Shown in pieces: positions 46,251 to 63,243 of a DNA stretch of 64,000 bases (the first letter of the stretch is position 1; every line of letters starts with the position of its first letter). The notes beneath the pieces were generated by a model. It searched no databases. It saw only the letters and a list, made by a program, of their open reading frames with translations, and was not told where the DNA came from. The stretch covers positions 8,089,554 through 8,153,553 of the forward strand of contig NW_002060946.1 in the NCBI RefSeq assembly GCF_000150275.1, in the 5' to 3' direction. Position numbers and translations under genes: made by a program. This DNA comes from Trichoplax adhaerens. Lineage: Eukaryota; Animalia; Placozoa.

Positions 46251-46939
46251 AAGACTATTAATTAATTATCAGACATAATTAGTCAATACTGCTAAAGACA
46301 GCAATTTCCCTGCGGCTAATTTTAGCTGTATTATGGAATAGGAATACTTTCTCTTATGACCAAAACAAATGGCTCAAAATGCCATCCCCTTCTACCACTT
46401 GCCTTTGCAATAAACGTTGTATGCAAAAACGAAGAATTGACAGGCAAATAAAGTATTGAATGATATTATGATATTTATTGTTACAAGTTCTATATCTATC
46501 ACGTAGAACTTTACTATTACTAATGCGCTTGTCTTTCGTCAAGGTGCTGGCTATCATACTCATAGCTAAGCATATTAACGTTGTTAAGTGACTGAATGAA
46601 CCATCCTAATTAGCATTCGTAAACTATCGGAAGATCTAGCTCGCATACTGTCACTAATCTGTAAGTAGTAGTTGAGAAAACGAGGATTATTTTAATTGCA
46701 ATAACGGAGCTAAGGCCAAGATAAAGTTTAAAGTCTTCTCCAGCGTAGCCATTCAATCAGATAAACAATGACACCTTTCCATCACACTATAGACAATAAC
46801 CAGCCATAAATAGAGAAGGGGGCATTCTCGAATAGAGTATATTTGCATAGCGGTCCTTAGTAAAGTTGCCGATTCATGATATTCTTTCTAGTCAGAAGCA
46901 ACAACCTGTAATATCATTCTCTACACCCATCCCATTTTG

Positions 46940-47150
46940 AGAATTTGATTGATAGAGATACAGAATGCTGTACCAATTCAATTACATTACTTATACAACA
47001 GTTTACAAGCTGTAGGATAACATTACCGCAACATCATTATTGTCACCCGTCCAATTTTATGAATTTGATTGATAGGCAAACAGAATGGTGTGCCAATTCA
47101 ACTAGGTTACTTATACAGCAGATTAGATGCAGTAGGATAATATCGCCGTA
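46940..47150. repeat. Tandem duplication (~120 bp x2)
   Basis: gaatttgattgatag...cagaatg.tgt.ccaattcaa.ta..ttacttataca.cag at 46941 and 47061. Confidence 0.75.
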
Positions 47151-47428
47151 TATTTCCGATCACACCACCTTGTGCGTAGGAGAGACGAGCTCCTATTTTC
47201 AGCCAATCAGTCGACAAGCCATCAACTGTTCATCATTTAACGTCTTCTGGTTAAACTTGTTTATAGCTTTGTGGCAGGATTGTGATATTGTACGTGAAAG
47301 ATAAACATGTAAAGATGATATGCCATAATTTGATCATTAAGATATAGGATCAGATAGTTATGCACTACACGTAAGGACCGTTTTGATCGAATATTTATTG
47401 AAAACAACGATTCTTTATAGGTCAAACT

Positions 47429-48034
47429 ATGAAAGCAAATTGGACATTAATCGCTATTAGCGCTATATTACTTGTTGCAACCATTTTGGGTCCTGAACAA
47501 GAACGTCAAAGTATGGAGCAGCCTGAATCCGAAGAAGAAGACTATTTCTATCCTGATGATGTCGATGATCCTGATCAGGGAGAACCTAGGGGATTACCAT
47601 CACGGAAAATGTATTCGGGTGGTACAACCAAAAAACCACGAACCTCGAAAATGGTAAGAATTAAAACATCGCTTTCGTTGACACCAAATGCTCCTTTACG
47701 CAACATCCATATAGTTATAATAATCGTATAGTCATAAAATCAAACTACAGTTATAATTTTAGCGATGACGAAAAATTCATACGAATAGATCACTATAATT
47801 TAGGTTAGGCCTCTACTAAAGTTAACTAAGTAGAAATATTACGGCATTTCATTTCGCTAGGGTAAAATAACTTTTAATAATGATATCTCAATTGCTTATA
47901 TAGCAATTTCATCTTGCTTTATTGTCATTCATAAATGACTATATTTGCTTTTAAAGGGATGGGGTATGGATCGTTTGATGGCCTATGTGCACAAATTATC
48001 GAATTTGTTTAAATCAAAAATGAAGAAAAAATAG
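47429..48034 (+). CDS. Secreted peptide precursor A, 100 aa: signal, acidic propiece, basic linker and amphipathic Lys-rich C-terminus GWGMDRLMAYVHKLSNLFKSKMKKK; exons 47429-47653 and 47957-48034
   Basis: Hydrophobic signal MKANWTLIAISAILLVATILG; acidic ESEEEDYFYPDDVDDPD; donor ATG|GTAAGA at 47654; acceptor ttttaaag ending 47956; phase 0 open to TAG. 5'UTR acceptor at 47420. Confidence 0.72.
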
Positions 48035-51000
48035 ATTATAGGCCTTAAAATTTACGCGATGGCATGATAACCGCTTTAAATTGGATGATGCTACTCACCG
48101 TTAATTTCATGTCGAATTTAGGCCAGTTTAGTTTTATAACAATAATATTGGATTGATCAATTTTTTGGATAAAAGTCAGATCTTAATTTATTAGCCATTC
48201 TTTGTTTTTTCGAGATATTTAAATAGTTATTACCTTGCAATATTAGTAATTTTATTATAGTACTATTTTAATGTTATGGTTCTGTAATGTATTGGAGAGA
48301 TTTATAATATCACATTCAACGATTTAGCCACTATATTTATAACGTACTGGAAAATTAAATGATACGTAACGCTTCGTATAAATTTTAGAGTAGTTTAATT
48401 CACTCTGTTTGTATGCATTAGATCATAACGCGATATTGGCTTTTACTCTAGTGCTTACTGCTTAAAATAACCTACATGCTATTCATGTAGGTATAGATAT
48501 ATATGTAGCTATCATTGTAAATATGACTAGTAATGTTGGATAAATTTATAAATAAAATAATATATCATTCTGTATGGATCCATGGACATATCATTCATTA
48601 GCCATATTCAAAATGACTATATTAATACTTCAAGCATGTTAGCAGCTGAGATATGCCATTTCACACAGTTGCAAGCTAAGTTGACTGGATTGATCTATTC
48701 TCAACAGATATTAGCATCTGCTATGAGTAAATATAGAATCGATGTAATTCCATCTACATGCAAAAATATCATCTAACGATGCAAATCTCTTATGATATAA
48801 CGAAAATAGTTTTATCATGTCTAATTTATGTAATTTACTTGCTTATCAAAGAAAATATGCAAGGCACATCTAGTATCCTCTTTACTACTCTAGTTGAAGT
48901 GCTATATTGGCTTCATACATTTTACTTTTCATGCGATCTCTATTAGTGGTGTTAATGACTGTCAACGATGCAAAAGTGTATTTGCCGTTCGATAAACCAA
49001 CTTCTACTGGTAAAATAAGGTGATACTAGATAGATTTAAGAAGTAATAGACAATGTACTTTTGGTAATAGTGGATGAGTCTACTAATTTGTTTAGTACGT
49101 ACTGTAAATACAAATTGTAGAGTCTCACAGCACAAAAGTACACCAATTTCTATTACTGATAGCCAATAATTATTAGTAGCGTACCGGTAGTTCTTACCAT
49201 TTATCATAATGAGCTCGATCGATTCGATATTTCTGTTTCCATTTTCAAGCTATTTGATTACCTACTACAAGTTTATAAACAAGGAGCATACAATATAAGA
49301 GAAACAAGTATAAAAAATTACGGATTAATTGGAAAGCCCATATCATGGCAATGCTTAATTGGTTAAATGATTGTTCAAAAACTATACCGTATCTTTATCC
49401 TTAAGGTTACCTTCTTTACAAATTTATTACAAGAGATAGAAAATCAATTCTAAATTATAATTTGTATTTTATAAACTAGTATGGTACCCTTTCGATAGAA
49501 AAAAGCTACTGAGAAGTAAGCCTTGATGACTGCATTTATTTGCAGTTATATATTCACTCTATTTAACAATTGAGCTGGTTAAATAGCTTCTTTTTAATAA
49601 TTATAATTGTTGTACCTGTAAGAAGGTGTATAAGAAATGACCTCCCTTAATCGGGTGAAACGCTGTAGTTACTTACTACCATGGTTCTCATACATTACAT
49701 AAAGCAATAAACTTTGCTGCTGTTGGAAGGGTAAAATATTATATGCAAAATTACTGAAAATAAATAATATCTATTTTCTAATGAAGGATCCTTTGAACTA
49801 AGAATATAAATTTTTAATAAAATGTACAGGTATAAAAAGTAATTGACCTGTCATTACACCTTAATAGTTTGAATCTCTATGCTATAGGCTACCCATATTC
49901 GTTAAATATATCAAATATTGTGCAGCCTATGATTCATCTCCATTACTTTTTTCATGAGAGGTATTAAAATAATAATGTCGAAAATCATAGTCATAAAGTG
50001 CTATCTAGTTAGGATGAGCTTAACGAATAGCTATCATTCGACATTGATAGTACATAAATAAAGGCTCAAAGTAAGCATATTAATAAATCTAATGCTATAC
50101 CATGAAGAATTTGTGATTGATTAAGTAATATATCTAAAGTTGTACAGTTAAGGATTTGTGGCTGATTAAGTAGAGTAAAAATAAATGTGAACTGGCCGAT
50201 AGGTCTACAATTTTTAGCCTAGAGTCAAATCAAAACTGACTTGACTAAAACTACCGGAATTGTAAAGTGTCCATAGTTCTTCATTCTAGTTACTAAAAGT
50301 GAGTTAATATATCAACATTTGCTGACATTATGACGTACAATATTTCGAAAAATTTCTGAATATCTTACTATGATGACTATGTATCGAAATGAAAATCCCA
50401 CTAGAAAGATCAACATATATACATAAGGAATAGTTTATGAGAATGTAGATAAAAAATATTTATCTAAGGCCAAAATGAATCGTTTGATTTATTTCAAGTA
50501 TATTAATTAAAGTTAAGTTTTTATGCTTGAATTACTGCAATCCAGGGGAAAAGACAAACAGCGATTAAGCTATGAAGCCCTTTAGCTTTATCTGTCATAT
50601 AAATTATTTCACCGCAATTAATAATTAATAATTTTATTATTGTTTTAAATATCATTTTTATTGTCAGATATCCTTTCACATTGCCGTCGTAGTATAAGGT
50701 TTTTAGTATCATTGTGTTTAGAGTAATTTCTTTGTGTGCGAAATTGAAGTGAATTAAAATAGCTTTGAATAATCATTTTACCATGAAACGACAATCGACT
50801 TTTCATAGATTATTTCCCATTTAATTCATAAGAAATATCAATAAAATAATGCTATAATCCACATGAGACAGATCTAGACTAGTAAATATAATAATCTAAT
50901 GATAGACGAAAGCAATTAGAAGATTAAGTATATATATAGCTATTGTTAATTATCGAAAGCACTTGCATATTATGTATTTTACCGTATTACTTCACATGAA

Positions 51001-52807
51001 AAGTATAGAATTTATGATTTATACCTACGGAAAGAATAAATCTATACAGTATTTGACCTTTTCATTACCTTAACATGAGAGAGCGGAGCTACCACCATAG
51101 GTAGTGGATGAAGGTATTATGATTTATTAGTGAAATGATAGGATGTTAACAATGATGAAGCGCAAATCTTATTTATGGAACGGCAGTACAGTACTAGAGA
51201 TAAAAAATGAATGATTCTTTATAAGTGATCTTTGTATAATTAAAGGTAAGTATAAAAACCTAACTCTAGCTTGTTCTAAATGAATACATAATGATTTATT
51301 GACGAAGTTTCGGAATGTAAACAAGATGAGACACAAATCTTATTAATAGTATACGAGTAGGACTAAAGGTGGTAGATAATTTATATATGATCCTTATAAA
51401 CCATCTTGCATAATTAATACCGGTAGTAACATCCGAATATCTATGCCTATATTGTTTATTCAAAATTATTAATTCAGGATTACTTTCGTATTTACATACA
51501 ATCTAAACTACTCTGGATATGTTACGTTCAGAATTATAATCAGTAATTCGGTATCATTATTTATTTCTATAAATAAAACAAAGACGCAACATCATAAGCA
51601 ACTAGTAATGAAATAATCATTCGGAAGTTGTATCAAATTGTTTGTACATTTTATGAGTAATTTTTGAAGGTGTTATACTGTATATCAAAGAAAGCACTCC
51701 TTAACATTATGTCAACCAATTAATTTACTAAGTAAATCTGCCCCCATGACCAAAGCCGTTTCATCTGAAGTTTTGGATTATTCATCTGATTCTTATCGTG
51801 GCCTAATTTCATATTCCACAATGGTAGGCTATTGCTATTGGCATCACAGTTTGATAATCAATAGACTACATATATTATGCTTTCGGTCAATTATATTATT
51901 ACTCATTAATGGACAATATTTCGGTCCATCTTGTTTAAAGGCTCATAATGATATTTTGGCAGATTATACAATTTAGGTACTGAATGGATCTATCCTTTTC
52001 TAGCCTTCCGTATTGCACTCCGCTAAAACTAATTTTAAAAGCTCCATTATGCCCCATTACTATAGCAGCTACCGGTACTATGAAGGCCAGAAAATGGTCT
52101 TATGGTACTATTCTATAAGCTAATATTCGCAATTTACCCTAGCACTCGAAATTGTCTGAAGACCATCTTATAGACTCCATAGCAACGATAACTGCTAAAT
52201 TATTCAATTCTTAGTGATATTATTAAAGTACTCTTCTATATTTAATACTGCGTATGAACTAGTTGATTTCAATGTGATTATAAAATATCTTCAAACGTTT
52301 ACCATGTAAAACAGTACTATGGTAATAAAATGCTATTCTTAAATCACCGTTAAAGTCTTTTAAAATTAACCGCTGCTATCCTAGAAAAGACAATACATGC
52401 ATTAGCAATTAACAAATGAAGTTACTCAGTTGTATTACGTTTATCTATATCTAGAAGAATAATATATGAATAAAATAACATTTCTTTTTTGTCTTAGCAA
52501 AAGTATTCAAGTAGCTAAATCTCCACGAAATTACAAACATTTTACTTTGTCTCATAATAAGGTACGAAGTGATTAGTAGTGAGTTTGATTACGTGTAGTA
52601 ATAAAATTGACAGGTCTTATTGGTAGAAATAAGTTAGTTTTTTACTAACAAAATTGTGTTTGCAAGTATATATTGAGTACGGATCACATAATAGTATGAA
52701 TCGATTAACAATATTGTGTCTTATTTACTTTTGAAATTAACTAGCGTAAGAAATTTATCGATCACTGTCTAACTTCTCTCTTCATGATTACAGGTGCAAA
52801 TAGGAAA

Positions 52808-53307
52808 ATGAACATTAAATTGGCCTTGATAGCGTCGCTGTTTCTCTTTGCGGTGGCAAATGCTACCGAAGAAAATTACTCTGAATTCGAAAATCAATTA
52901 AAGGAAGAAGATGCAACCGATGATGCAACTCTCATGGATAAAGATGAAGGCGATGAAGATGATGAGACTGAGCAGCCAGTGGATATGATTGATGCTGATA
53001 AGGACCGCGAAGAGCTTGAAACACCAATGAAAAAATCGGTTAGTGTTTAGTATGCATTAATTGCTATAGCTTTTGTATCCCGTGACTAGTAAGTAATTTG
53101 CCTGCTTTTGAATATATTCCACTATTGTTATTAATATGAATTTTTATTACTGAATATTTTGGCATTTCTCAACTTAATGCCTATTTCTAAATTAAAATAT
53201 AGTTCTGGTGGCGCCGTCGTCGTCGTCGTCGTCATGATCGTCGTCGAGTTATCATTATTCCTCAACGTCCATTTTGGCGTCGTCGCAGCCATTTTCATGT
53301 ACCATAA
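52808..53307 (+). CDS. Secreted peptide precursor B, 111 aa: signal, 58-aa acidic propiece and FWWRRRRRRRHDRRRVIIIPQRPFWRRRSHFHVP; exons 52808-53038 and 53203-53307
   Basis: Signal MNIKLALIASLFLFAVANA; 25 D/E in the propiece; donor TCG|GTTAGT at 53039; acceptor atatag ending 53202. Exon 2 is a GC-rich CGT-codon island open to TAA. 5'UTR acceptor at 52793. Confidence 0.85.
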
Positions 53308-55538
53308 AACGTTTAGAATGCAGACAAGATAAGGTTACTTCGTACTCCCCTTAATAGTATGTAAAGTGCAGGTAGTTCATAGTAGCATTAGAGACAGCAT
53401 ATTTACCTTATGCAAAACTAGATAGATAATTGTTATTACTTATGAGGATTTATGTCAAAGTAGAATATACAAAATTCTGCACGCGTAATTCATAAATAGG
53501 CGAAATTGAAATACCTATGTCTAAAAATGCAGATATTGGCCATACTATTTTATGTATTTTTATCAATATTTTATAATTTACGCAACCGTTATCTTTGTTT
53601 GATTGAGAAATAAATCTTTAAAATTTAAATTTCTTGGATCAATCATTGATATTGAGGAAAGTGAACAATTTAAATTCCATTGCTTTAGAGATGTTTAAAT
53701 TTAGTAATGGCTCTATGGTCTCATAGATACGCTTTCAAATAAACGCATTTAGCTGCAATAAATAGTACATGTCGTGATGATATACCGTAGTATTTATTGA
53801 GCGATATCATTAATAATCCGGGATAATATTGAGATTATAGTGTCCTCATTTTTGTTAGTAACCAATTAATCATGAAAGACCTAACAATAACTATTGAGAA
53901 GGTTAACTGTCAACAAATTCATAGAATGCTTAGGCTTACATTAATCATAATTTACATATATTTAAGTTGATTATAGTCATTAGAAAATATAAAAATTTGT
54001 CGATGAATAGTCATGTTATTAACGCTTGAAACAAACACTATTGTTATGAGAAAGTAAACTATGTTCAACTAGATCTTAATAACATTATATTTTGATTCTT
54101 TACTGAGAATAAATTACATCAGATGTGCGCAAAGATGAAAAAGTAAAACATTTCGTGAATAAGAATGCATCATTTTAACTTATCAAAAGACCGAACTCTC
54201 CATTAGAAAGGTTTCTTTTGGCACATAACTATAAATGCTGTAATTCTAAATATGAAAGCTTGACTTTAATTTATTACTACTAAGGATGATATTTAGTTAT
54301 GATTTAAATTCTTACCAATGATAAAGACAGCCTTAAGAGATCGTGAATAACTCACAAAAAATTACCATTCCCGGATTGATGTTATTTTCTCCTTTCGACT
54401 ACTGTATGGCATTAAACAATTTACAAGTTGATTAGATTTGTAAACCTATCAATATTGCAATGCAATATCAATACCAGAATCAGTGTTCATTTTAGTTAGG
54501 AGAATTTCTTCATATTATTTATAACGAAATGTATACTCCGTAAACAAGTAATGTTAAGAGTAAATAGTGCTAAATGTGTGCAAGTCTTAGCGTATCCTCT
54601 AATAGAGTTTACTACACAAATAAACGTAAATTACTGCATTTGTTCTATGCATACGAGTACAAACTACGCGAATCCTTTCTTTATTAATTATTTGAATTGT
54701 ATTCCGAATTTTTTCTAAATAATAGGTTAGTAAAGCTCAACAGAAAATTTATATATTCTTCTAGAACTATTTGTGCTACGCTTCTTATGATTACATTTGC
54801 TAACAGCAATGTATGCGGTATTAAAATTTGCAAATATATTGCTATTTTAACATTCTAACTGTAAAATAATAAAAGCTGCATAAATCAGGGCATGAAATAT
54901 TTGATGATAATAGTTACTATAAACTTTAATGAATGCATTATATCCAAAGTCTAGTAATAATCTATTTACTATAGCTAAACTTCATTTATATGGTACATTG
55001 TTCTTCCATTTGTATACAATCTGCATCATCTGGACGAAAATTAATTATTCCATAGTATAATACGATCTGGTTAACTTTTTCCCCAATAAATGTAATGAAA
55101 GGCATAATTAGGGCTGTACGTCAAGAACAACAACTCCATGCTTAAGCATCTCTTTTATTTTCTTTCACTTGAATTAATGTTACTAAACTTTCTATACCGA
55201 ATGTACCGCAATTAATATGATTAAAGGATATTCGTGGAAGTATAGGCAGTTTGAGACTTGTCAAGTTCATTAACGTCAAGACCATGATTAGCGTTTATAT
55301 TTTTGATCTGTGGTACGATCATACAATGATGAATGGTCAGCATTTTATTCTTGTATTCACAAATTAATTTCCCCGGCGTATAACTCAAAACACTTGCAGA
55401 CTTTACCACAGGGTAAATTGGACAAAGAAGTTTGGCTCCAATACCAGTTCAATGTCTTTAATTTACTGAATAACTTTAACTATTTAACGAAGACCGTAAC
55501 GATTATCTCGAATTCAAGATTAAGTTCCAGAATTAACC

Positions 55539-56483
55539 ATGGCTTATATTTTTTTGGCTGCAGTAGGAGGATTTGGCGCTTTATTATGTTTTTCTCTAGT
55601 GATATTTACGTTAAGCCGCCGCCAGCTACGGTCACCAAGTTATGCTTCCTTTATAAGCTTATGTACTAATGGGATACTCTTTGGTAGTTTGTATTTAATG
55701 CCAAGGTATGGCACAGATTTTTCTCGTGATACTCCTGTAATTTGCCATATGTTACCACGATTAGGTCAAGCACTTTTACTTAATGTTGGTCTCCACGTTT
55801 CTGTAATGACTATTGAACGATATTTCGCTATCGTATATCCATTCAAATACCAACGATTTATAACTAGAGGAACTGTAATGGTTATCATCTTATTTTTATG
55901 GTTTCTGGTTATTGGCTTGCAAGCAATTGTTAGTGGACTCGAATTCATTCAAATTAATCAGACAGTTGCTAATAAATGTGCTTATAGTAGAGGATTCGAA
56001 AACACCAGCAATCTTATTAATGCCGGATTTAGCGTTGCATTAAGCTGCTTAACGCTAATCATCTTAATTTACGTATATACACTTGTTTTAATCATCATAA
56101 GACGCCACCAAGACAAGATTCGTCGGCAACTTACTCTATCGAATCCAGATAAAATAGCAGTTAAAACTCGTAAAAAAGCAGTATTACAAACTGGTTTGCT
56201 TTTTGGTGTTTACTTGGTCTTCTTTTTACCTTTTCTTTTTGTGACTGCTTTTTTACCTCGTTTGCCATTCAGCAAGCCGTTATATTATTTTTATATCAAC
56301 GTTTTGCGAAATATGGCGTTCATTTTTCCGTTTATTCAACCCTTGTTATATTTAAAATTTACGGCTAATATTAACAGAGAGTTAAAAAGCATTCTAGGAA
56401 ATCTTTCAGTACATAAAAGTGCTGCTAGTAATCCGAATATTGCTATACTTACTTTTGAAAAATCGATAGGTATGCAGATATAG
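55539..56483 (+). CDS. Orphan rhodopsin-like (class A) GPCR, 314 aa, single coding exon
   Basis: Seven hydrophobic segments, ICL1 LRSP, TM3 Cys (VICH), MTIERYFAIVYPFKY (DRY variant), TM4 Trp, TM6 FFLPF and TM7 QPLLY (NPxxY variant). Confidence 0.9.
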   Translation: MAYIFLAAVGGFGALLCFSLVIFTLSRRQLRSPSYASFISLCTNGILFGSLYLMPRYGTDFSRDTPVICHMLPRLGQALLLNVGLHVSVMTIERYFAIVYPFKYQRFITRGTVMVIILFLWFLVIGLQAIVSGLEFIQINQTVANKCAYSRGFENTSNLINAGFSVALSCLTLIILIYVYTLVLIIIRRHQDKIRRQLTLSNPDKIAVKTRKKAVLQTGLLFGVYLVFFLPFLFVTAFLPRLPFSKPLYYFYINVLRNMAFIFPFIQPLLYLKFTANINRELKSILGNLSVHKSAASNPNIAILTFEKSIGMQI

Positions 56484-59090
56484 CAAGATTTAAAACCGTA
56501 CGTGATCATGTACTTGGGTGTAGGATTGAACAACTATTCTGTGCCTATTTTATTTCTTAGCGACATAGTTACAAGCAGTTTCAGATAGATTGGTCTATTT
56601 TGCTGTCTTTATTACTCAAGATAGAATAATATCTGTTGGGTTTGGATTAGCAAGACTGATCTAAATAGTCACTACCGAGTACAGCCAATAATTGTATGAT
56701 TACTGATACATTGATATACTTTTGCGCATTTATAATATAGTTTAAAATTTTTAAATGGCTTATTCGATATCGATATAGTTTCTTAAGTACTCTTATATGT
56801 ACACAATCCATAACTGTAGATAAAAGTTACGGTAGCCAATTCAAAATTATCCAAGATAAGTTCAAGCTCGCGAGAATCTCGTAGACTATTAGTAGTAGGC
56901 GTAATTAAATTTTAAATTATCTATCCCTGGTAGTACACACGGTGCCGCAAATGTACTAAGATTTTGTAGTAATTTGGTACTATACCGCTTTATACACGTA
57001 CAGTATATCCTTATTAAACTCGTCATTTTATTGAATAATGATTACCGTGGCATTAATAGAGGAAATTGAGAATTTACTCTTTTCTATAGGCGACAGAAAC
57101 TGAAATAACTGAAATGAAGTAGTTTCTTTGTTTACTATTAATTATTACTAATTTACTATCCTAAGAAGTGAAAAATGCTACTATATCTGTAATTAAGTCA
57201 ATTGATGCAAATGAAATAAAGACAGTGCATTCGCACCTCCTGCTAAGATATATTGATACAGATGGATTTTCTGAACATAATCTACTGGTATAAAATAATT
57301 ATTGAATCATAATATCCCATATATAGAATAAAACTAATAGACGCATATCCTTTTACCTATCTGAGATATTATTGAAGTTTCGTTATTAACTTAAAATTAT
57401 GGATAGTACCATAATAGACTCCATGAAATGATCAAGATCGAACGCGTAGGATATTTACAGAGCATGCATTCATATAACTTAAACAATTAATAAGCTATGG
57501 TATATTATAGGCTGTTATCATCACAACGTTATATTGACTATCTGCCATTTTTTTCCTATCAGTAGAGTTGTTAGATGGATTATTTATAAGAATTATAAGA
57601 ATAAAGTATTTTACTGTCTCTTCATTAAAAATGTGTTTACATATATCGGTTCAAGTAGGTAAGATTACTCCAATCGTATATAATTTCATAAATCACAACT
57701 CATGGTATGCTATGATGTAAATTAGACGTATTTTCGTGCTTTACTATCCATGACATAAAGCCAAGTTATCCTAACATTCTCATAATTAATTGTGAATTGT
57801 AATTTTTCGCAACTAGATCTATCTTAATATCAAAATGACTTAAAGATCTTATACGCATATAGCAAGTTGTGATATAACTGATCATGAAAATCCAAAAGTT
57901 ATAGAAAATTAAAACTTTATTAGATCTTTATACAAATATAATCTACGCACGCCTCTACTCTAGCTGAATATAACTACTAAACACTTCTAGAAAGAACTAA
58001 TAGAATAATCTAAGCTGCCAGCTCGTATACTTTTGGTAACATTTACAACGACAATCAGCATAGTTGCAACATTCTACCATATTTTATAGATATTCAGATT
58101 ATTACTAGTGACACCATTTTAAAGCGGATCATCATCAATCCAATGTTGAAACTACTAAAGTATTTACGTACGCATAATTTTTACTAGTTAGAGTACGATA
58201 AACTAGCCATATCATAATATATGAGTATGAATTACAGTTCTATTTTTACCTCTAACCTCAATAGTAACTCGAAACCCTACTGTACAGTGTATAATCATCT
58301 GTACTCTAGCGTAGAATCTTTCATTACAGTCCATGCTTATGAACTACTAAATATGTATTAAGTATTAAGAAAAAATATCGAAAGTCACGCTACCGTATAT
58401 CATACTAAACATGGCTAATAGTCTACAATCCCAATACAAAGTTACGTTACAGGCAACTATGAAGATTTTACTTCCATATCCGGCTTCAATAATTATCATT
58501 GCACTAAAAGCTTGAGCTCATAGGATCATGATGTGATTGTTATATTACTATAGAATTAAATATTAATTTGTTGAAATTTTATTTGTTGACACCTGGATAC
58601 TAATGTAAACATAGCTATCGAATGATCAAAGGCATAAATTAACTAAAATTAGCTTTGTAATACCCGTTGTAAAAGAGATACAGTTAAATTTTACTTAGTC
58701 TACGTTGATTAGATTGCCAAATTTTATAAGTATATATACGTATTTTGACGATACTTCATTATCCTGAACGTAAGTCTATTCTACATAGGCAAGTGGCTTG
58801 TTAATCTTAGTAGAGCGATAGGAATGTGGCCATTTCTAGAGATTATTAAAACAACATTAGACGAATCCTTATATATCATAGGATATTATATGTAGCCATC
58901 TAGAATGGATACTTACGTAACATCGACACACAATTGTTAATCCAATCATATTTGAACTCATTATTTTAATATTGCTCTCAGGCAGATTAGACTGACTTGA
59001 CAAATAAATAGGATATTTTGGTAGAGCAAGATACTCAAGCCATTTTACTTCGTACTTGAATTGATCGTATAATAGAATAATTATAAAAGA

Positions 59091-59767
59091 ATGAATTTTT
59101 GGCTGATCTTGATCGCGTCTTACTTCTCTTGATAATTACTTACGCTGCTAAGATCATTTTGAATTCAAAAATCAAGTAACGAAAAAGAAAACATAATTAA
59201 AGTTAGCGATGTTGGCGATAAGAGTGTTGTAAGACAGTGAAATATCGTATTCTAAGTTGATAATATATTTAGTAATGTCTACCGTAGATATTGCGTTTAT
59301 TTACACGTAGGTATTGTGTTCAACGTGTAATAGATATTTCGTTAGAGGCTTAAGTATTAAATACGAATATAGCTAGCTTAGTAACTGTATCGTTTTGAAG
59401 AGAACTACTACAATGCTCACACTAGAGCTTCACATGAAAGGTGTAAATGATTCTGTATTTAAGATGCTAATAATGGAGTGTGTAGTAAGTAAGGTGCTAA
59501 GATTGTTAAGGCGGAAAAGTATATAAGCGAGTAGTTTAGTACAATAAAATACTTCTTTCTCGTTAGTGATCCTCAGCTGATCGATTACGTTGTATCTTTG
59601 CAAACAAGGTTTTTTTCAATAAACCTTAATTTTCGATAGGTTTGAAGATTCTTGATCTATCAACCTCACAAGTGTATATGAGTGTATATGAAGTCGAACA
59701 ACAGGATCAAGACGCTAATATTGAAGAACTAGAAAAAGTCGCATCTTCTATAAAATAGATGGTTAGT
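59091..59767 (+). pseudogene. Decayed paralogue (C) of precursor B exon 1, interrupted and frameshifted
   Basis: atgaatttttggctgatcttgatcgcgtct...gaattcaaaaatcaagta aligns with B (atgaacattaaattggccttgatagcgtcg...gaattcgaaaatcaatta) with frameshifts and a stop. An acidic remnant EVEQQDQDANIEELEK lies at ~59690, followed by a stop and the same GTTAGT donor at ~59762. Confidence 0.6.
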
Positions 59768-59984
59768 ATTAGAGTGCCATAGCTGTTATATTGTTGATAT
59801 GAATCTACTAATCTATAAGCCCATGAGTGAAATGCAGTATCTGATGTTTGTATGCTTATAAAGTCTGGCAGTCAATTATTAGTTAAAAAAGTTCCAATAT
59901 TAAATCCGGTTCTATTGCCTATCAATGGAACTATGTTCAATATTACTATAGTAACTTATGTCGTATTTCTGATATGCCTTGCCT

Positions 59985-60275
59985 TGCCTCAGGCCTATAA
60001 TCTCAGACAATTTGAAGCGAATAATTTAGCGCATTGCATTATTATAACTGTATAGGATTGAAGGCTGTAAAATTTCAGACTCACTCTTTTAATGCTATAT
60101 CCTGTACCATTACTAATGCAGTTTTTATACTATACTATAACTTATACTACGTTATATGATATTTTCGACAAGTCTTGCCTAAGGCTAATATCTCAGAAAA
60201 TTTGAAGCAGATAATTTAGTGTATTACATTATTATAGCTGGATTGAAAGCTGTAAAATTCCAGACAGACTCTTTT
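59985..60275. repeat. Local duplication (~105 bp x2, ~190 bp apart)
   Basis: cttgcct.aggcta.a.tctcaga.aatttgaagc..ataatttag...ctgtaaaatt.cagac at ~59983 and ~60174. Confidence 0.75.
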
Positions 60276-60992
60276 TAGAATGTAATCCAGGAGCAAGTTA
60301 GCACTTTGGCAGAGATAAGACCCTTCATAAAAGGATTAGGCTTTAGTAAAGTTCTAAATGCAATATTTTAATGGATCCTTAGTGGATGAATAAACAAGAG
60401 AAGTCTAATTATACGGAGTCTCATGCAGCCCATTAAAGCTCTGTTAAATTGCAATGTGTTCATTCAGCTATTAAGTTAACTTAGGATCTGATATTGGAAA
60501 GTGAATTTCGTCCGTAAGAAAATTGCAACTATTGCTCTATTTGGAAAAGAGTTTCCATTTACTTAGCACTATGATAATTATTATAATAAAACATGCGTGG
60601 AAACCAAATTTAGTTTTAGGAGTTTGCTACACCAATGCTATTCTATGATTTGTACTGGACAAAAAATTTTTTTTTTGGATAATGATGAGAATCGGCACGT
60701 AAAATTTGCATTAACGGCCAGACAAAGAAGTCATAGCATTTTACTCACTAAGAATGAGTCGGCATTTAATATTGGAGAAAGTAAGAAAGCAAGTGAAGAG
60801 TCGAAAGTAATCTCCTGTTATCTAGCTTAATGATAATGGCATAATTTTACTGAGAATAGAAATTACAATAATTTTAGAGTTACTGCTATTTAATAATCAT
60901 TTATAAGATCGCTAGTGTAAACAAATCAAATAAATATAGTCTTATCGCTGTCTTGGCGTTAAAAAGTGGTGAATGAATACAGGTCTAATAAT

Positions 60993-61460
60993 NNNNNNNN
61001 NNNNNNNNNNNNNNNNNNNNNNNNNNNNNNNNNNNNNNNNNNNNNNNNNNNNNNNNNNNNNNNNNNNNNNNNNNNNNNNNNNNNNNNNNNNNNNNNNNNN
61101 NNNNNNNNNNNNNNNNNNNNNNNNNNNNNNNNNNNNNNNNNNNNNNNNNNNNNNNNNNNNNNNNNNNNNNNNNNNNNNNNNNNNNNNNNNNNNNNNNNNN
61201 NNNNNNNNNNNNNNNNNNNNNNNNNNNNNNNNNNNNNNNNNNNNNNNNNNNNNNNNNNNNNNNNNNNNNNNNNNNNNNNNNNNNNNNNNNNNNNNNNNNN
61301 NNNNNNNNNNNNNNNNNNNNNNNNNNNNNNNNNNNNNNNNNNNNNNNNNNNNNNNNNNNNNNNNNNNNNNNNNNNNNNNNNNNNNNNNNNNNNNNNNNNN
61401 NNNNNNNNNNNNNNNNNNNNNNNNNNNNNNNNNNNNNNNNNNNNNNNNNNNNNNNNNNNN
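60993..61460. other. Assembly gap (N run)
   Basis: 468 consecutive N. Confidence 1.
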
Positions 61461-62993
61461 TAATCAAGAATAGTTTTTACCGATTATCTGTGTACATTCT
61501 AGCTGAATTGGTAGATTAGCTTTCGCAGTGCAACTATCCAAATTATAATATTTCGATTACCCTAGATAAGAGCATCAACACTGGTGATAAAATGAATTCT
61601 ATAAACATAAGGAAAATTTAAAGGTAAGTCCGGGTTAGAGTCATATTTTTCATGTAGCAAACTAACTCCTTCCGCCGTTCATTTGATTTCAATAGATCGT
61701 TTATTGAGTATTCATGTTACCTTATTAGTCATAATTTAAACAGACTTTAATAATTTCAATAGCGGCAGACTTTGGTATCATTGATGACTATCCTATAACT
61801 AATTAATTTGGCTAAAGTAAATGAAAAATATAGGAATGAAACTTCAATAAACAAGTTTTGAATTAGGATTATTTTTTCCTTGTGATATCATCACGATATA
61901 CTGAATGTAATTGTAGCCATGATTAATTTATTCCATTGTTATCTCAGAATATAGATAGCAAGCTCAACACTTGAATTATAAAGATTAGTGTATATGTTCC
62001 TATATACAGTATAGTTAGTAATATATATGTAATGTTTATATTAATTTCAACTCAAATCCTAATTACCCTGTCCACAAGGCTCTTATAAAGTAAACAACGT
62101 CAATTTTCTTTGTTTATTGATATGGAACTACATGTTGCCTAAGGCATCTGGTAATCGTATGCTATTAGAAATGTTCACAATCAGCATCATGTATGTAAAA
62201 CTGTCATTATTCCATCTTAGTACTTTAAATAACAATCTTAAGAGAAATTTTATTGAGATCAGACTAATTTGTAACAACCCATTGAAAATATTATCTTAAT
62301 ACTCCATTTATTATGTGACTTCAACCCGTCGTTAATACTTTCATTTCCCTGATTTAAAACACAAAGAATTGTTACCTTCCTCTTTATTACCTTTTCGTTA
62401 TCCAAAATGCACTATTTTTACAATAAAGCATATAAAATTGAAGATAATAATAAGCGTGTGAACAAATAAAAACGATGTTTTTTAGTTGAAATTTTCCTGA
62501 ATTATCGAAATTAAAGATATCGATACTGAGGAAATTACAATGCAAACACTCTCAGATTGATTAGAACTATGACTTTATTTTAATTTCGCTCGAATATTTA
62601 TCAATCATTTATAAAAGTAAGACGTTCCTTTTGTTAAAGCTAGGATATATAAACAGCTATCTTGCAGCTCAAAATCTTAACCACTGGAAATCGAACACTA
62701 AGCTTCCTTAAAATATTGTCTATTGCTTTACTTTGGAAATTCAGGAAGGATCGCAGAATTTATCTCAAGAATTAATTTAGAAAATTAAAAGTTGTTGAGG
62801 TACGTATTAACATTAAGCGTTTTTTAAAAATCAAGGTTATAGTCGCAATAATATGTATTAATCATTCAATCTATACTATATTCGAAGATGCCGTATATTC
62901 ATCATTTCAATTTCAATTCGAATACTACAGTCCATCCAGTACTAAAAATTAATCTTTATTTCATTGACTATACAGAAGGATCATTGCAAGAAA

Positions 62994-63243
62994 ATGAATA
63001 CTAAATTGGCTCTCATTGCGTGTCTATTTCTCTTTGCATTTGCTTACGCCACTTAAAAATTTTTTAAATATATCTATCTAAATACTAAAACTCTTTTCAA
63101 CTTGAAATTTACTATAGCAGGCCTTTTGGCGCCGTCGCCGCCGCCGTCGTCGTGCTCCAGCCCCTGCTCCGAAACCTCGACGTCCCATCATCTTCCATTT
63201 TTATCGTCGTCGACAGATTTTCGTCTATGGCAAAAAACGATAA
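62994..63243 (+). pseudogene. Paralogue D of precursor B: signal MNTKLALIACLFLFAFAYAT then stop (62994-63056), propiece and donor missing, but intact cationic exon 63121-63243 (AFWRRRRRRRRAPAPAPKPRRPIIFHFYRRRQIFVYGKKR)
   Basis: Signal is nearly identical to B, with TAA where B has GAA. No GT lies between the stop and the TAGCAG acceptor at 63115-63120. The last exon is open for 40 codons. Confidence 0.72.

What the first reader, a model, noticed from the sequence alone, without database searches (positions are those of the whole stretch)
47429..63243. Hidden cluster of secreted acidic-propiece/cationic-peptide precursor genes undergoing birth and death
Seen in sequence: four same-strand loci (47429, 52808, 59091, 62994) over 16 kb. 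The two intact genes share one design: 5'UTR intron, an exon with signal peptide plus D/E-rich propiece, a phase-0 intron, then an exon holding only a strongly cationic peptide. B, C and D are alignable paralogues; A shares the architecture only. The ORF track misses all cationic exons. Established: signal/anionic propiece/cationic mature peptide is the layout of Hydra arminins, frog dermaseptin-family precursors and placozoan trichoplaxin, where the propiece is thought to neutralise the toxic peptide. Inference: this is a fast-evolving innate-defence or prey-lysing peptide cluster with an exchangeable payload exon. Arminin-like precursors have been reported in placozoans as I recall, so novelty of these members needs checking.
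Basis: partly seen in the sequence, partly recalled or inferred. Interest (0 to 1): 0.9.

Follow-up and report, generated by a model that had tools for sequence, protein, structure and literature searches.

The report
Known placozoan cationic-peptide genes, partly decayed
Two working genes and two wrecks in Trichoplax encode secreted precursors (signal peptide, acidic spacer, short strongly basic peptide); they belong to an already published family of putative antimicrobial peptides and both working genes already have public gene models, so this adds new members, not a new kind.

Summary
The four loci exist. They are not hidden. Locus A is TRIADDRAFT_56104 and locus B is TRIADDRAFT_56105. Both public models contain the cationic exon. 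B's model carries a 102-residue N-terminal extension that the transcript contig does not support and that buries the signal peptide.

B, C and D belong to a family of at least 20 loci in this genome. Members have a conserved signal peptide, an acidic propiece, a phase-0 intron, and an exon starting with Trp plus 5-13 Arg. The family includes trichoplaxin-2 (synthetic peptide MIC 0.25-2 µM, 2020) and the "arminin-like" AMP3 and AMP4 (2025).

- D is a 99% copy of AMP4 with a ~672-bp deletion that leaves a stop after the signal peptide. It sits on a 2.5-kb island between runs of N.
- C is a ~90-nt relic.
- A is only weakly similar to the family and carries a predicted helical payload.

Propiece and payload charges balance across the family (r = -0.78, n = 11). 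The antimicrobial role of A and B is untested. This scan met the same family earlier on other DNA.

The parts
47262..47289 (+). Gene A (TRIADDRAFT_56104): 3' end of the 5'UTR exon. The start of this exon was not determined.
   Evidence: A 28-letter loose end of an X8 contig at 47421 maps to 47262-47289 and is followed by GTACGT.
47290..47420 (+). Gene A: 5'UTR intron, 131 nt, GT..AG
47421..47653 (+). Gene A: exon with the ATG at 47429. It encodes the signal peptide and the acidic propiece (75 codons, 14 D/E in the propiece).
   Evidence: Contigs X8 record 13 and X10 record 1 cover it. It is identical to residues 1-75 of P0008.
47654..47956 (+). Gene A: phase-0 intron, 303 nt, GT..AG
   Evidence: Joint 47652>47956 (cut +1) in X10 (side 230) and X8
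47957..48034 (+). Gene A: payload coding part, 25 aa with net charge +6, plus the stop codon. The exon continues as 3'UTR to about 48747.
   Evidence: X10 record 1 reaches 48747. AlphaFold2 on P0008 gives a helix at 76-98, which matches this exon.
51587..51823 (+). Gene B (TRIADDRAFT_56105): first 5'UTR exon seen. It holds five upstream ATGs.
   Evidence: X10 record 5 and joint 51822>52497; upstream ATGs and their stops
52498..52561 (+). Gene B: second 5'UTR exon. The reading frame from the ATG at 51746 stops here.
   Evidence: Joints in X10; translation of each exon separately
52794..53038 (+). Gene B: exon with the ATG at 52808. It encodes the signal peptide and the acidic propiece (77 codons, 25 D/E).
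   Evidence: A family profile built without B scores it at 40 bits, E 3.5e-12.
53039..53202 (+). Gene B: phase-0 intron, 164 nt, GT..AG
   Evidence: Joint 53037>53202 (cut +1) in X8 and X10, side 149 in both
53203..53307 (+). Gene B: payload exon, 34 aa, starting F-W-W plus seven Arg, net charge +13, with no C-terminal Gly signal, plus the stop codon.
   Evidence: identical to the C-terminus of P0017
59088..59190 (+). Locus C: decayed relic of a family signal exon and the start of a propiece. A stop follows 13 codons, and frame shifts are present.
   Evidence: nhmmer E 1.8e-4; local alignment to B with z = 5.3; translation; no payload exon before the gap
60993..61460 (.). Assembly gap (N run) between C and D; it lies in no gene part.
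   Evidence: Homology of the D island to the AMP4 locus starts at 61494.
62968..63056 (+). Locus D: 5' leader and signal-peptide codons 1-20 of an AMP4-type gene (ATG at 62994), then a TAA stop created at the deletion junction.
   Evidence: 99.3% identity to the intact copy L032 up to 63056
63057..63117 (+). Locus D: remnant of the last ~60-68 nt of the intron. About 672 bp are missing (the whole propiece, the donor and most of the intron).
   Evidence: blastn of D against L032 shows L032 755-1426 absent; about 688 bp is absent relative to the C1378 copy
63118..63243 (+). Locus D: payload exon of AMP4 type with a tandem acceptor (63118 or 63121). It has eight Arg, a Pro-rich stretch and ends G-K-K-R plus stop. 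It has no donor to join.
   Evidence: The annotated intact copies P0010 and P0013 start this exon with Q-A-F-W.

Best explanation
This is a small cluster of secreted-peptide precursor genes of Trichoplax adhaerens. It holds two working genes and two wrecks. B, C and D belong to the placozoan family that includes trichoplaxin-2 and the "arminin-like" AMP3 and AMP4. A is a distant or merely similar neighbour with the same build.

**Likely mechanism**
1. The N-terminal signal peptide takes the precursor into the secretory pathway.
2. The acidic propiece offsets the charge of the basic C-terminal peptide while it is made and stored.
3. Prohormone-convertase-type enzymes cut at the basic run.
4. 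In members that end in Gly plus basic residues (D type, but not A or B), the C-terminus is amidated.
5. The cationic peptide is released from epithelial or gland cells and acts on microbial or prey membranes.

**Shown here**
- Gene structures and splicing in contigs.
- Family membership and charge balance.
- Decay of C and D.

**Taken from papers**
- In vitro antibacterial activity of synthetic trichoplaxin-2.
- Expression of AMP1-4 in ventral epithelial or gland cells.

**Inferred**
- Secretion, processing sites and any activity of the A and B peptides.
For: - Splice junctions of A and B are seen in contigs of two runs from two studies.
- G000 fits T. adhaerens, and A and B are on the same 8.16-Mb contig as TRIADDRAFT_56104 and 56105.
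- B's exon 1 finds 14 paralogous places in the genome. A search for Trp plus six Arg codons finds about 22 family exons.
- All 11 members examined have a GT..AG phase-0 intron between propiece and payload.
- Trichoplaxin-2 maps to C1378 with the same gene build, 10 kb from an AMP4-type copy.
- The D type equals TRIADDRAFT_64402, which is AMP4. AMP3, TRIADDRAFT_60631, equals locus L043.
- A family profile built without B scores B at E 3.5e-12.
- Propiece charge against payload charge gives Pearson r = -0.78, p = 0.005, n = 11. A is exactly balanced at -6/+6.
- AlphaFold2 on P0008 gives a signal helix at 5-20, a disordered propiece and a helix at 76-98, which matches the payload exon.
- Synthetic trichoplaxin-2 has MIC 0.25-2 µM (PMC7436000).
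- In situ data place AMP1-3 in peripheral ventral epithelial cells and AMP4 in gland-type cells near the rim (PMC12013895).
Against: - No peptide from A or B has been detected or tested.
- B and D payloads are not amphipathic as helix or strand. Their hydrophobic moments lie below those of shuffles, so a classical pore-forming helix does not fit them.
- A's helical moment is only moderate (0.47; 8% of shuffles reach it).
- A and B lack the C-terminal Gly signal of most members.
- The 11 members used for the charge correlation are related, so its p-value is optimistic.
- The long 5'UTR isoform of B holds five upstream ATGs, which may limit translation.
- X8 and X10 are RNA only by guess. The one certain RNA run, X11, shows B's exons and an unspliced piece but no joint.
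- No signal-peptide predictor was available.
Confidence: 0.6

Rival explanations
1. The peptides are signalling molecules (neuropeptide-like). The Arg runs and RRR blocks would be cleavage sites that release short, partly amidated peptides acting on receptors.
For: - Family payloads are hydrophobic tri- to pentapeptides separated by RRR. Most end in Gly plus Lys/Arg, a standard amidation signal.
- In L049 the same G-K-K motif lies inside the precursor between two payload modules, so it looks like a true processing site.
- D's payload ends in a typical Gly-Lys-Lys-Arg signal.
- Metacells expressing AMP4 were classed as "peptidergic" or "epithelial unknown".
- A rhodopsin-type receptor gene lies between B and C.
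Against: - A and B have no amidation signal.
- Payloads are hypervariable between paralogues (25% identity), unlike the repeated conserved copies in known placozoan precursors.
- The published RWamide and YYamide peptides are different sequences.
- Full cutting at every RRR would yield di- to pentapeptides.
- The receptor's position alone is not evidence.
Confidence: 0.12
2. The peptides serve external digestion. They would lyse or permeabilise algal and bacterial prey under the animal rather than defend it.
For: - Published family members are expressed in the ventral, feeding epithelium.
- Trp plus poly-Arg heads resemble cell-penetrating sequences.
- The animal digests externally (PMC12013895).
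Against: - AMP1-3 cells are peripheral and overlap little with the central digestive-enzyme cells.
- No lysis data exist for any member.
- This reading is hard to separate from a defence role.
Confidence: 0.15
3. The Arg-aromatic block peptides act as condensing or sticking material together with polyanions (their own propiece, mucus, nucleic acids). They would pack granules or help adhesion, not kill.
For: - Payloads are blocky, with three Arg followed by three or four aromatic or aliphatic residues, and are not amphipathic.
- Charge is matched by the propiece.
- Peripheral ventral cells have dense granules.
Against: - This rests on composition only.
- Synthetic trichoplaxin-2 is antibacterial.
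- A's payload is an ordinary Lys-rich helix.
Confidence: 0.07
4. A and/or B are transcribed but make no functional peptide; they would be decaying members like C and D.
For: - Two of the four loci are dead.
- B's long leader has five upstream ATGs.
- B lacks the family's C-terminal signal.
Against: - Reading frames, splice sites and signal peptides are intact.
- A is 99/100 identical in Trichoplax sp. H2, and B's 213-aa model is in the same 90% cluster in H2.
- The coding parts carry few differences: 2 in A and 1 in B. A's 3'UTR piece carries 17 in 792 nt.
Confidence: 0.05

Closest known systems
Trichoplaxin-2 precursor (EST GR418172.1; Juretić et al. 2020, PMC7436000)
   Same: It has the same gene build: a signal peptide of the same type, an acidic propiece of 71 residues in exon 1, a phase-0 intron, and a payload exon starting W-W plus 13 Arg. 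It is the same family as B, C and D, and it lies 10 kb from an AMP4-type copy.
   Different: The payload after the Arg run is different (21% identity to B's). Trichoplaxin-2 ends in Gly-Lys, and B has no such end. Only trichoplaxin-2 has been synthesised and tested.
Placozoan "arminin-like" putative AMPs: AMP3 (Ta 60631) and AMP4 (Ta 64402) (Mayorova et al. 2025, PMC12013895)
   Same: D is a 99% identical copy of AMP4. AMP3 is family locus L043. They share the signal peptide, acidic propiece and Arg-rich payload.
   Different: D has lost its propiece, donor and most of its intron. B is a separate paralogue with its own payload. That paper does not mention Ta 56104, Ta 56105 or trichoplaxin. 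Membership of AMP1 and AMP2 was not tested directly.
Hydra arminins
   Same: They share the layout of signal peptide, anionic N-terminal part and cationic C-terminal peptide. They also share clustered paralogues and very high expression in a feeding epithelium.
   Different: Arminin genes are reported as confined to the genus Hydra (PMC10945409). No sequence comparison was run here. The likeness is one of design, not of descent.
Frog dermaseptin-type precursors and cone-snail toxin superfamilies (from general knowledge)
   Same: They have a conserved signal region next to a fast-diverging mature peptide. Here the figures are 53% for the signal against 25% for the payload. The frog precursors also have an acidic spacer.
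   Different: They are unrelated in sequence. Here the boundary of propiece and payload is an intron, and the payload begins with a Trp-polyArg head.
Mammalian alpha-defensin propeptide (Pfam PF00879)
   Same: It is an anionic propiece that balances a cationic peptide. One family member (exon 1 of L053) just reaches the Pfam threshold, at 23.7 against 23.6 bits.
   Different: A and B give no Pfam match. The payloads have no defensin fold or cysteine pattern.

Membership tests
Placozoan trichoplaxin-2 / AMP3 / AMP4 family | Conserved N-terminal signal peptide of the M-N-x-K-L-x-L-I-A type | tested here: met
   - B and D: met. Their signal peptides are 80% identical to each other. B scores E 3.5e-12 against a profile built without it.
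- C: a relic, E 1.8e-4.
- A: only weak, 13 bits, E 8.6e-4 among 131 window ORFs, and E 0.009 at DNA level.
Placozoan trichoplaxin-2 / AMP3 / AMP4 family | Acidic propiece whose charge offsets the payload | tested here: met
   Propiece and payload charges are A -6/+6, B -19/+13 and intact D type -15/+18. The family correlation is r = -0.78. D in the window has lost its propiece.
Placozoan trichoplaxin-2 / AMP3 / AMP4 family | Phase-0 GT..AG intron between propiece and payload exon | tested here: met
   Present in 11 of 11 members examined, introns 146-533 nt. Seen spliced for A and B.
Placozoan trichoplaxin-2 / AMP3 / AMP4 family | Payload exon begins with Trp or Trp-Trp followed by 5-13 Arg | tested here: met
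   B (F-W-W plus 7 Arg) and D (A-F-W plus 8 Arg): met. A: not met, because its payload is a Lys-rich helix with no Arg run. A is therefore not filed as a full member.
Placozoan trichoplaxin-2 / AMP3 / AMP4 family | C-terminal Gly followed by basic residues (amidation signal) | tested here: not met
   D type: met (ends G-K-K-R). A ends in Lys residues without Gly, and B ends H-V-P. L043 (AMP3) also ends differently, so the feature is common but not universal.
Hydra arminin family | Sequence homology to arminin genes | not tested
   No arminin sequence was at hand in the tools. PMC10945409 states that arminins are confined to Hydra. Only the layout matches.
Known placozoan neuropeptide precursors (RWamide, YYamide and others) | Encodes the published peptides | tested here: not met
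   The published peptides differ from every payload listed. The idea that the family equals those precursors was dropped.
Alpha-defensin propeptide (PF00879) | Pfam match above the gathering score | tested here: not met
   No match for A (P0008) or for B's exon 1. Only the paralogue L053 reaches the threshold.

The most novel reading that the evidence does not exclude
The family would be a modular "chassis plus payload" system. The acidic propiece co-evolves in charge with an Arg-aromatic block peptide that works by condensation with polyanions or by cell penetration, not as an amphipathic pore-former. A would show that a quite different, helical Lys-rich payload can ride on the same chassis. 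That would make this cluster a natural case of payload replacement at a conserved phase-0 intron.
Probability: 0.12. Interest if true: 0.6.

Novelty: new member of a known kind. Interest (0 to 1): 0.3.

Why it matters
Placozoans are among the simplest animals, so their secreted effector peptides bear on how early animals handled microbes and prey.

This window adds two uncharacterised, transcribed members (Ta 56104 and Ta 56105) to a family known from trichoplaxin-2 and AMP3/AMP4. It also gives a clear example of gene death in that family.

Practical points:
- The public model of Ta 56105 buries its signal peptide behind an N-terminal extension that the transcript contig does not support. Secretome screens would likely miss it.
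- The two papers that describe family members do not cite each other's genes as one family. Here they map to one family and even to neighbouring loci.
- Charge matching of propiece and payload across paralogues can be tested at the bench.

Tried and rejected
- **RWamide and YYamide.** I considered that the family encodes these published peptides, because several payloads would end in such amides. The published peptides are different, so I dropped the idea.
- **B's exon 1 in the word-indexed protein search.** It found nothing. This was a length-window blank, because the annotated model is 213 aa. The exhaustive profile search found it.
- **B against C by plain blastn.** It found nothing. Only local alignment with shuffles and nhmmer showed the relic.
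- **ESM Atlas look-alikes of A.** Only weak bacterial hits came back (0.77), below any useful level.
- **Pfam.** No hit for A or B.
- **Paper searches.** Searches for the peptides and the gene ids found no mention. The one "56105" hit is a catalogue number.
- **Supplements of PMC12013895.** They hold no sequences.
- **Joined spliced models.** I did not search or fold my own joined models. Exons were used one by one by reference, and the whole precursors were taken from database proteins (P0008, P0017). The frame check across B's leader exons was done exon by exon.
- **Limit of read laying.** Only 47400-53350 could be laid on reads (one call, at most 6 kb), so transcription of C and D and the reality of D's deletion were not tested.


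Full report
**What is there**

The window is AT-rich eukaryotic DNA. It lies at C1411:8089554-8153553 of a 105.6-Mb assembly of 1414 contigs. Proteins encoded on that same 8,164,392-base contig are named Trichoplax adhaerens by NCBI.

- **Locus A.** The ATG is at 47429. A 75-codon exon ends at 47653 before GTAAGA. After an AG at 47955-47956 comes a 25-codon exon ending with a stop at 48032-48034.
- **Locus B.** The ATG is at 52808. A 77-codon exon ends at 53038 before GTTAGT. After an AG at 53201-53202 comes a 34-codon exon ending with a stop at 53305-53307.
- **Locus C.** At 59091 it reads 13 codons and then a stop.
- **Locus D.** At 62994 it reads 20 codons of a signal peptide and then TAA. 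A 40-codon Arg-rich frame follows at 63121-63243, behind an AG.

**Transcripts**

One call of read laying was allowed, with at most 6 kb. I laid 47400-53350, which holds both intact genes, on four runs from four studies. All are assembled contigs, so depth says little.

- 47653/47957, GT..AG, in X10 (a 1026-nt contig with 230 letters on the shorter side) and in X8.
- 53038/53203, GT..AG, in X8 and X10, with 149 letters on the shorter side in each.

The 5'UTR introns are also real.
- For A, a 28-letter loose end at 47421 in X8 maps to 47262-47289 and is followed by GT.
- For B, the X10 contig joins 51587-51823, 52498-52561 and 52794 onward.

Some limits apply.
- X8 and X10 are RNA only by guess.
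- X11 is the one run recorded as RNA. It covers B's exons but shows no joint, and it holds an unspliced piece at 53009-53231.
- X9 looks like thin DNA.
- Contigs of X8 and X11 run unspliced for 10-27 nt upstream of B's 52794 acceptor, so a nearer start site may also be used.

**Not hidden**

The profile and exact-sequence look-ups show that both intact genes have public models.

Its Trichoplax sp. H2 twin is 99/100 identical.
- **B** is TRIADDRAFT_56105 (XP_002111748.1, 213 aa), with an H2 counterpart, TrispH2_010013, in the same 90% cluster. Its last 111 residues are exactly exon 1 plus the payload exon. The model starts at an ATG at 51746 and runs through exons that the X10 contig does not show.
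- In the X10 contig, the frame from 51746 meets a stop six codons into exon 52498-52561. The other four upstream ATGs also end early.
- The start shared by the whole family is the ATG at 52808. The public model thus buries the signal peptide at residues 103-122.
- My first search with B's exon 1 was blank only because of the length window of that tool.

**The family**

B's exon 1 finds 14 weaker matches in the genome, with the same signal peptide and an acidic continuation. Behind each lies an exon that starts with Trp or Trp-Trp and 5-13 Arg. A pattern search for Trp plus six Arg codons gives 33 matches, against 15 for the reversed control. About 22 of them are such exons, lying in small clusters.

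In 11 members examined, the propiece and payload are always split by a GT..AG phase-0 intron of 146-533 nt.

Published genes in the family:
- **Trichoplaxin-2.** The paper's peptide maps to C1378:35695-35757. Its gene has a 71-residue first exon, and its second exon starts W-W plus 13 Arg. This fits the paper's remark on residues 71-86.
- **AMP4.** The intact form of D is TRIADDRAFT_64402, which Mayorova et al. 2025 call AMP4.
- **AMP3.** TRIADDRAFT_60631 is locus L043.

That paper never mentions trichoplaxin. An AMP4-type copy and trichoplaxin-2 lie 10 kb apart on C1378.

Arminins themselves are reported as confined to Hydra, so the likeness to them is one of design.

**Each locus in that light**

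- **B.** It is a clear member. A profile built without it scores it at 40 bits, E 3.5e-12. Its signal peptide is 80% identical to the D type.
- **D.**
  - It is 99.1-99.4% identical to the intact AMP4-type copies on both sides of a clean internal loss of about 672 bp.
  - The loss joins codon 20 to the last ~68 nt of the intron and creates the TAA.
  - The payload exon is intact only because the copy is young. It has no donor to be spliced to.
  - The annotated intact copies use an acceptor 3 nt upstream, giving a tandem acceptor at 63118 or 63121.
- **C.** It is a relic. The family's DNA profile hits 59088-59176 at E 1.8e-4. A 30-nt stretch matches B's propiece start in the right order. Nothing more can be aligned, and no basic exon remains before the gap.
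- **A.**
  - It has no paralogue in the genome and no Trp-polyArg head.
  - It scores only 13 bits against the family protein profile (E 8.6e-4 among 131 window ORFs) and E 0.009 against the DNA profile.
  - It shares the build, including an intron just before the ATG.
  - I treat it as a distant relative or a look-alike.

**The gap**

The N run 60993-61460 cuts no gene part. The stretch to its right matches the AMP4 locus from 61494 on. In G000 the window's end is followed at once by 3.6 kb of N, and another N run lies further on. These could be gaps or withheld letters.

D therefore sits on a 2.5-kb island, and its membership of this cluster rests on scaffolding. More AMP4-type upstream sequence lies near the contig's end. 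AMP4-type copies also sit on several small contigs. This fits a recently amplified, poorly assembled array.

**How it probably works**

- Charges are matched. Propiece charge ranges from -6 to -24 and payload charge from +6 to +35, with r = -0.78 (n = 11, related genes). A is exactly balanced.
- Signal peptides are conserved (mean 53%), while propiece (27%) and payload beyond the Arg head (25%) are not.
- AlphaFold2 on the database protein for A, without an alignment, gives mean pLDDT 65. It shows a signal helix, a disordered propiece and a helix at 76-98 that coincides with the payload exon, with pLDDT about 84 over residues 81-90.
- A's helical hydrophobic moment is moderate: 0.47, reached by 8% of shuffles.
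- The payloads of B and D are blocky and Pro-containing, and they are not amphipathic. They resemble Arg/Pro/Trp-rich linear peptides more than pore-forming helices.
- In L049 a G-K-K motif lies inside the precursor between two payload modules. This supports G-K-K as a real processing and amidation site in the family. A and B lack it.
- Function rests on relatives. Synthetic trichoplaxin-2 kills bacteria at 0.25-2 µM. AMP1-4 are expressed in ventral epithelial or gland-type cells.
- No paper in the library mentions Ta 56104, Ta 56105 or their peptides.

**Rivals**

- A signalling role is suggested by the RRR blocks and amidation signals. The published RWamide and YYamide peptides are different molecules, and the payloads are too variable.
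- A prey-lysis role cannot be separated from defence with the present data.
- A packing or adhesive role for Arg-aromatic blocks is speculation from composition.

**Verdict**

The cluster, however, consists of annotated genes of a published family plus two wrecks.

What is new is modest:
- Two untested members.
- A corrected start for Ta 56105.
- The link between trichoplaxin-2 and AMP3/AMP4 as one family.
- Charge matching across paralogues.

Earlier follow-ups of this scan reached the same family on other DNA. I re-derived the trichoplaxin-2, AMP3 and AMP4 links myself.

Noticed in passing
window 55539-56483 (+): An intronless 314-aa reading frame between B and C matches the rhodopsin-type seven-transmembrane receptor family (PF00001, E 2.6e-18). 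Nothing links it to the peptide genes other than position.
   Followed up: partly
window 46924-47140: A 120-nt unit is repeated 1.8 times (82% match), about 120 nt upstream of A's 5'UTR exon. It may be a duplicated promoter element.
   Followed up: no
window 47665-49791 (-): Low-depth contigs in X8 and X10 carry CT..AC joints (47692/49197, 49264/49388, 49264/49616). This indicates a spliced minus-strand transcript running antisense across A's intron, payload exon and 3'UTR.
   Followed up: no
window 47958: In X8 a second form of A's junction has A instead of G at 47958. It is reported as joint 47654/47959 with one extra letter. It would change the first payload codon from Gly to Glu. It could be an allele or an assembly error.
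   Followed up: partly
window 51608-51823: The long 5' leader of B holds five upstream ATGs. All end in stops before the main ATG in the observed exon structure. The public 213-aa model starts at one of them.
   Followed up: yes
window 63110-63121; loci L032, L007: The AMP4-type payload exon has a tandem acceptor (TATAG-CAG). Annotated proteins include the extra Gln (P0010, P0013). Both forms stay in frame.
   Followed up: partly
L049 (C1410:625016-628035) and L055 (C1411:7400494-7403513): Some family genes carry two or more Trp-polyArg payload modules, separated by acidic spacers and introns. They are multi-payload precursors.
   Followed up: no
P0007 (TRIADDRAFT_63910), P0016 (TRIADDRAFT_64292): Public T. 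adhaerens models of other family members read the payload exon in a wrong frame or run into the intron. The Arg-rich peptides are therefore missing from the reference proteome.
   Followed up: partly
L053:1100-1336: Exon 1 of this paralogue just reaches the Pfam threshold for the mammalian defensin propeptide (23.7 against 23.6 bits). This fits the paper's remark that AMP1 was labelled "alpha defensin". It is probably similarity of signal-plus-acidic composition.
   Followed up: partly
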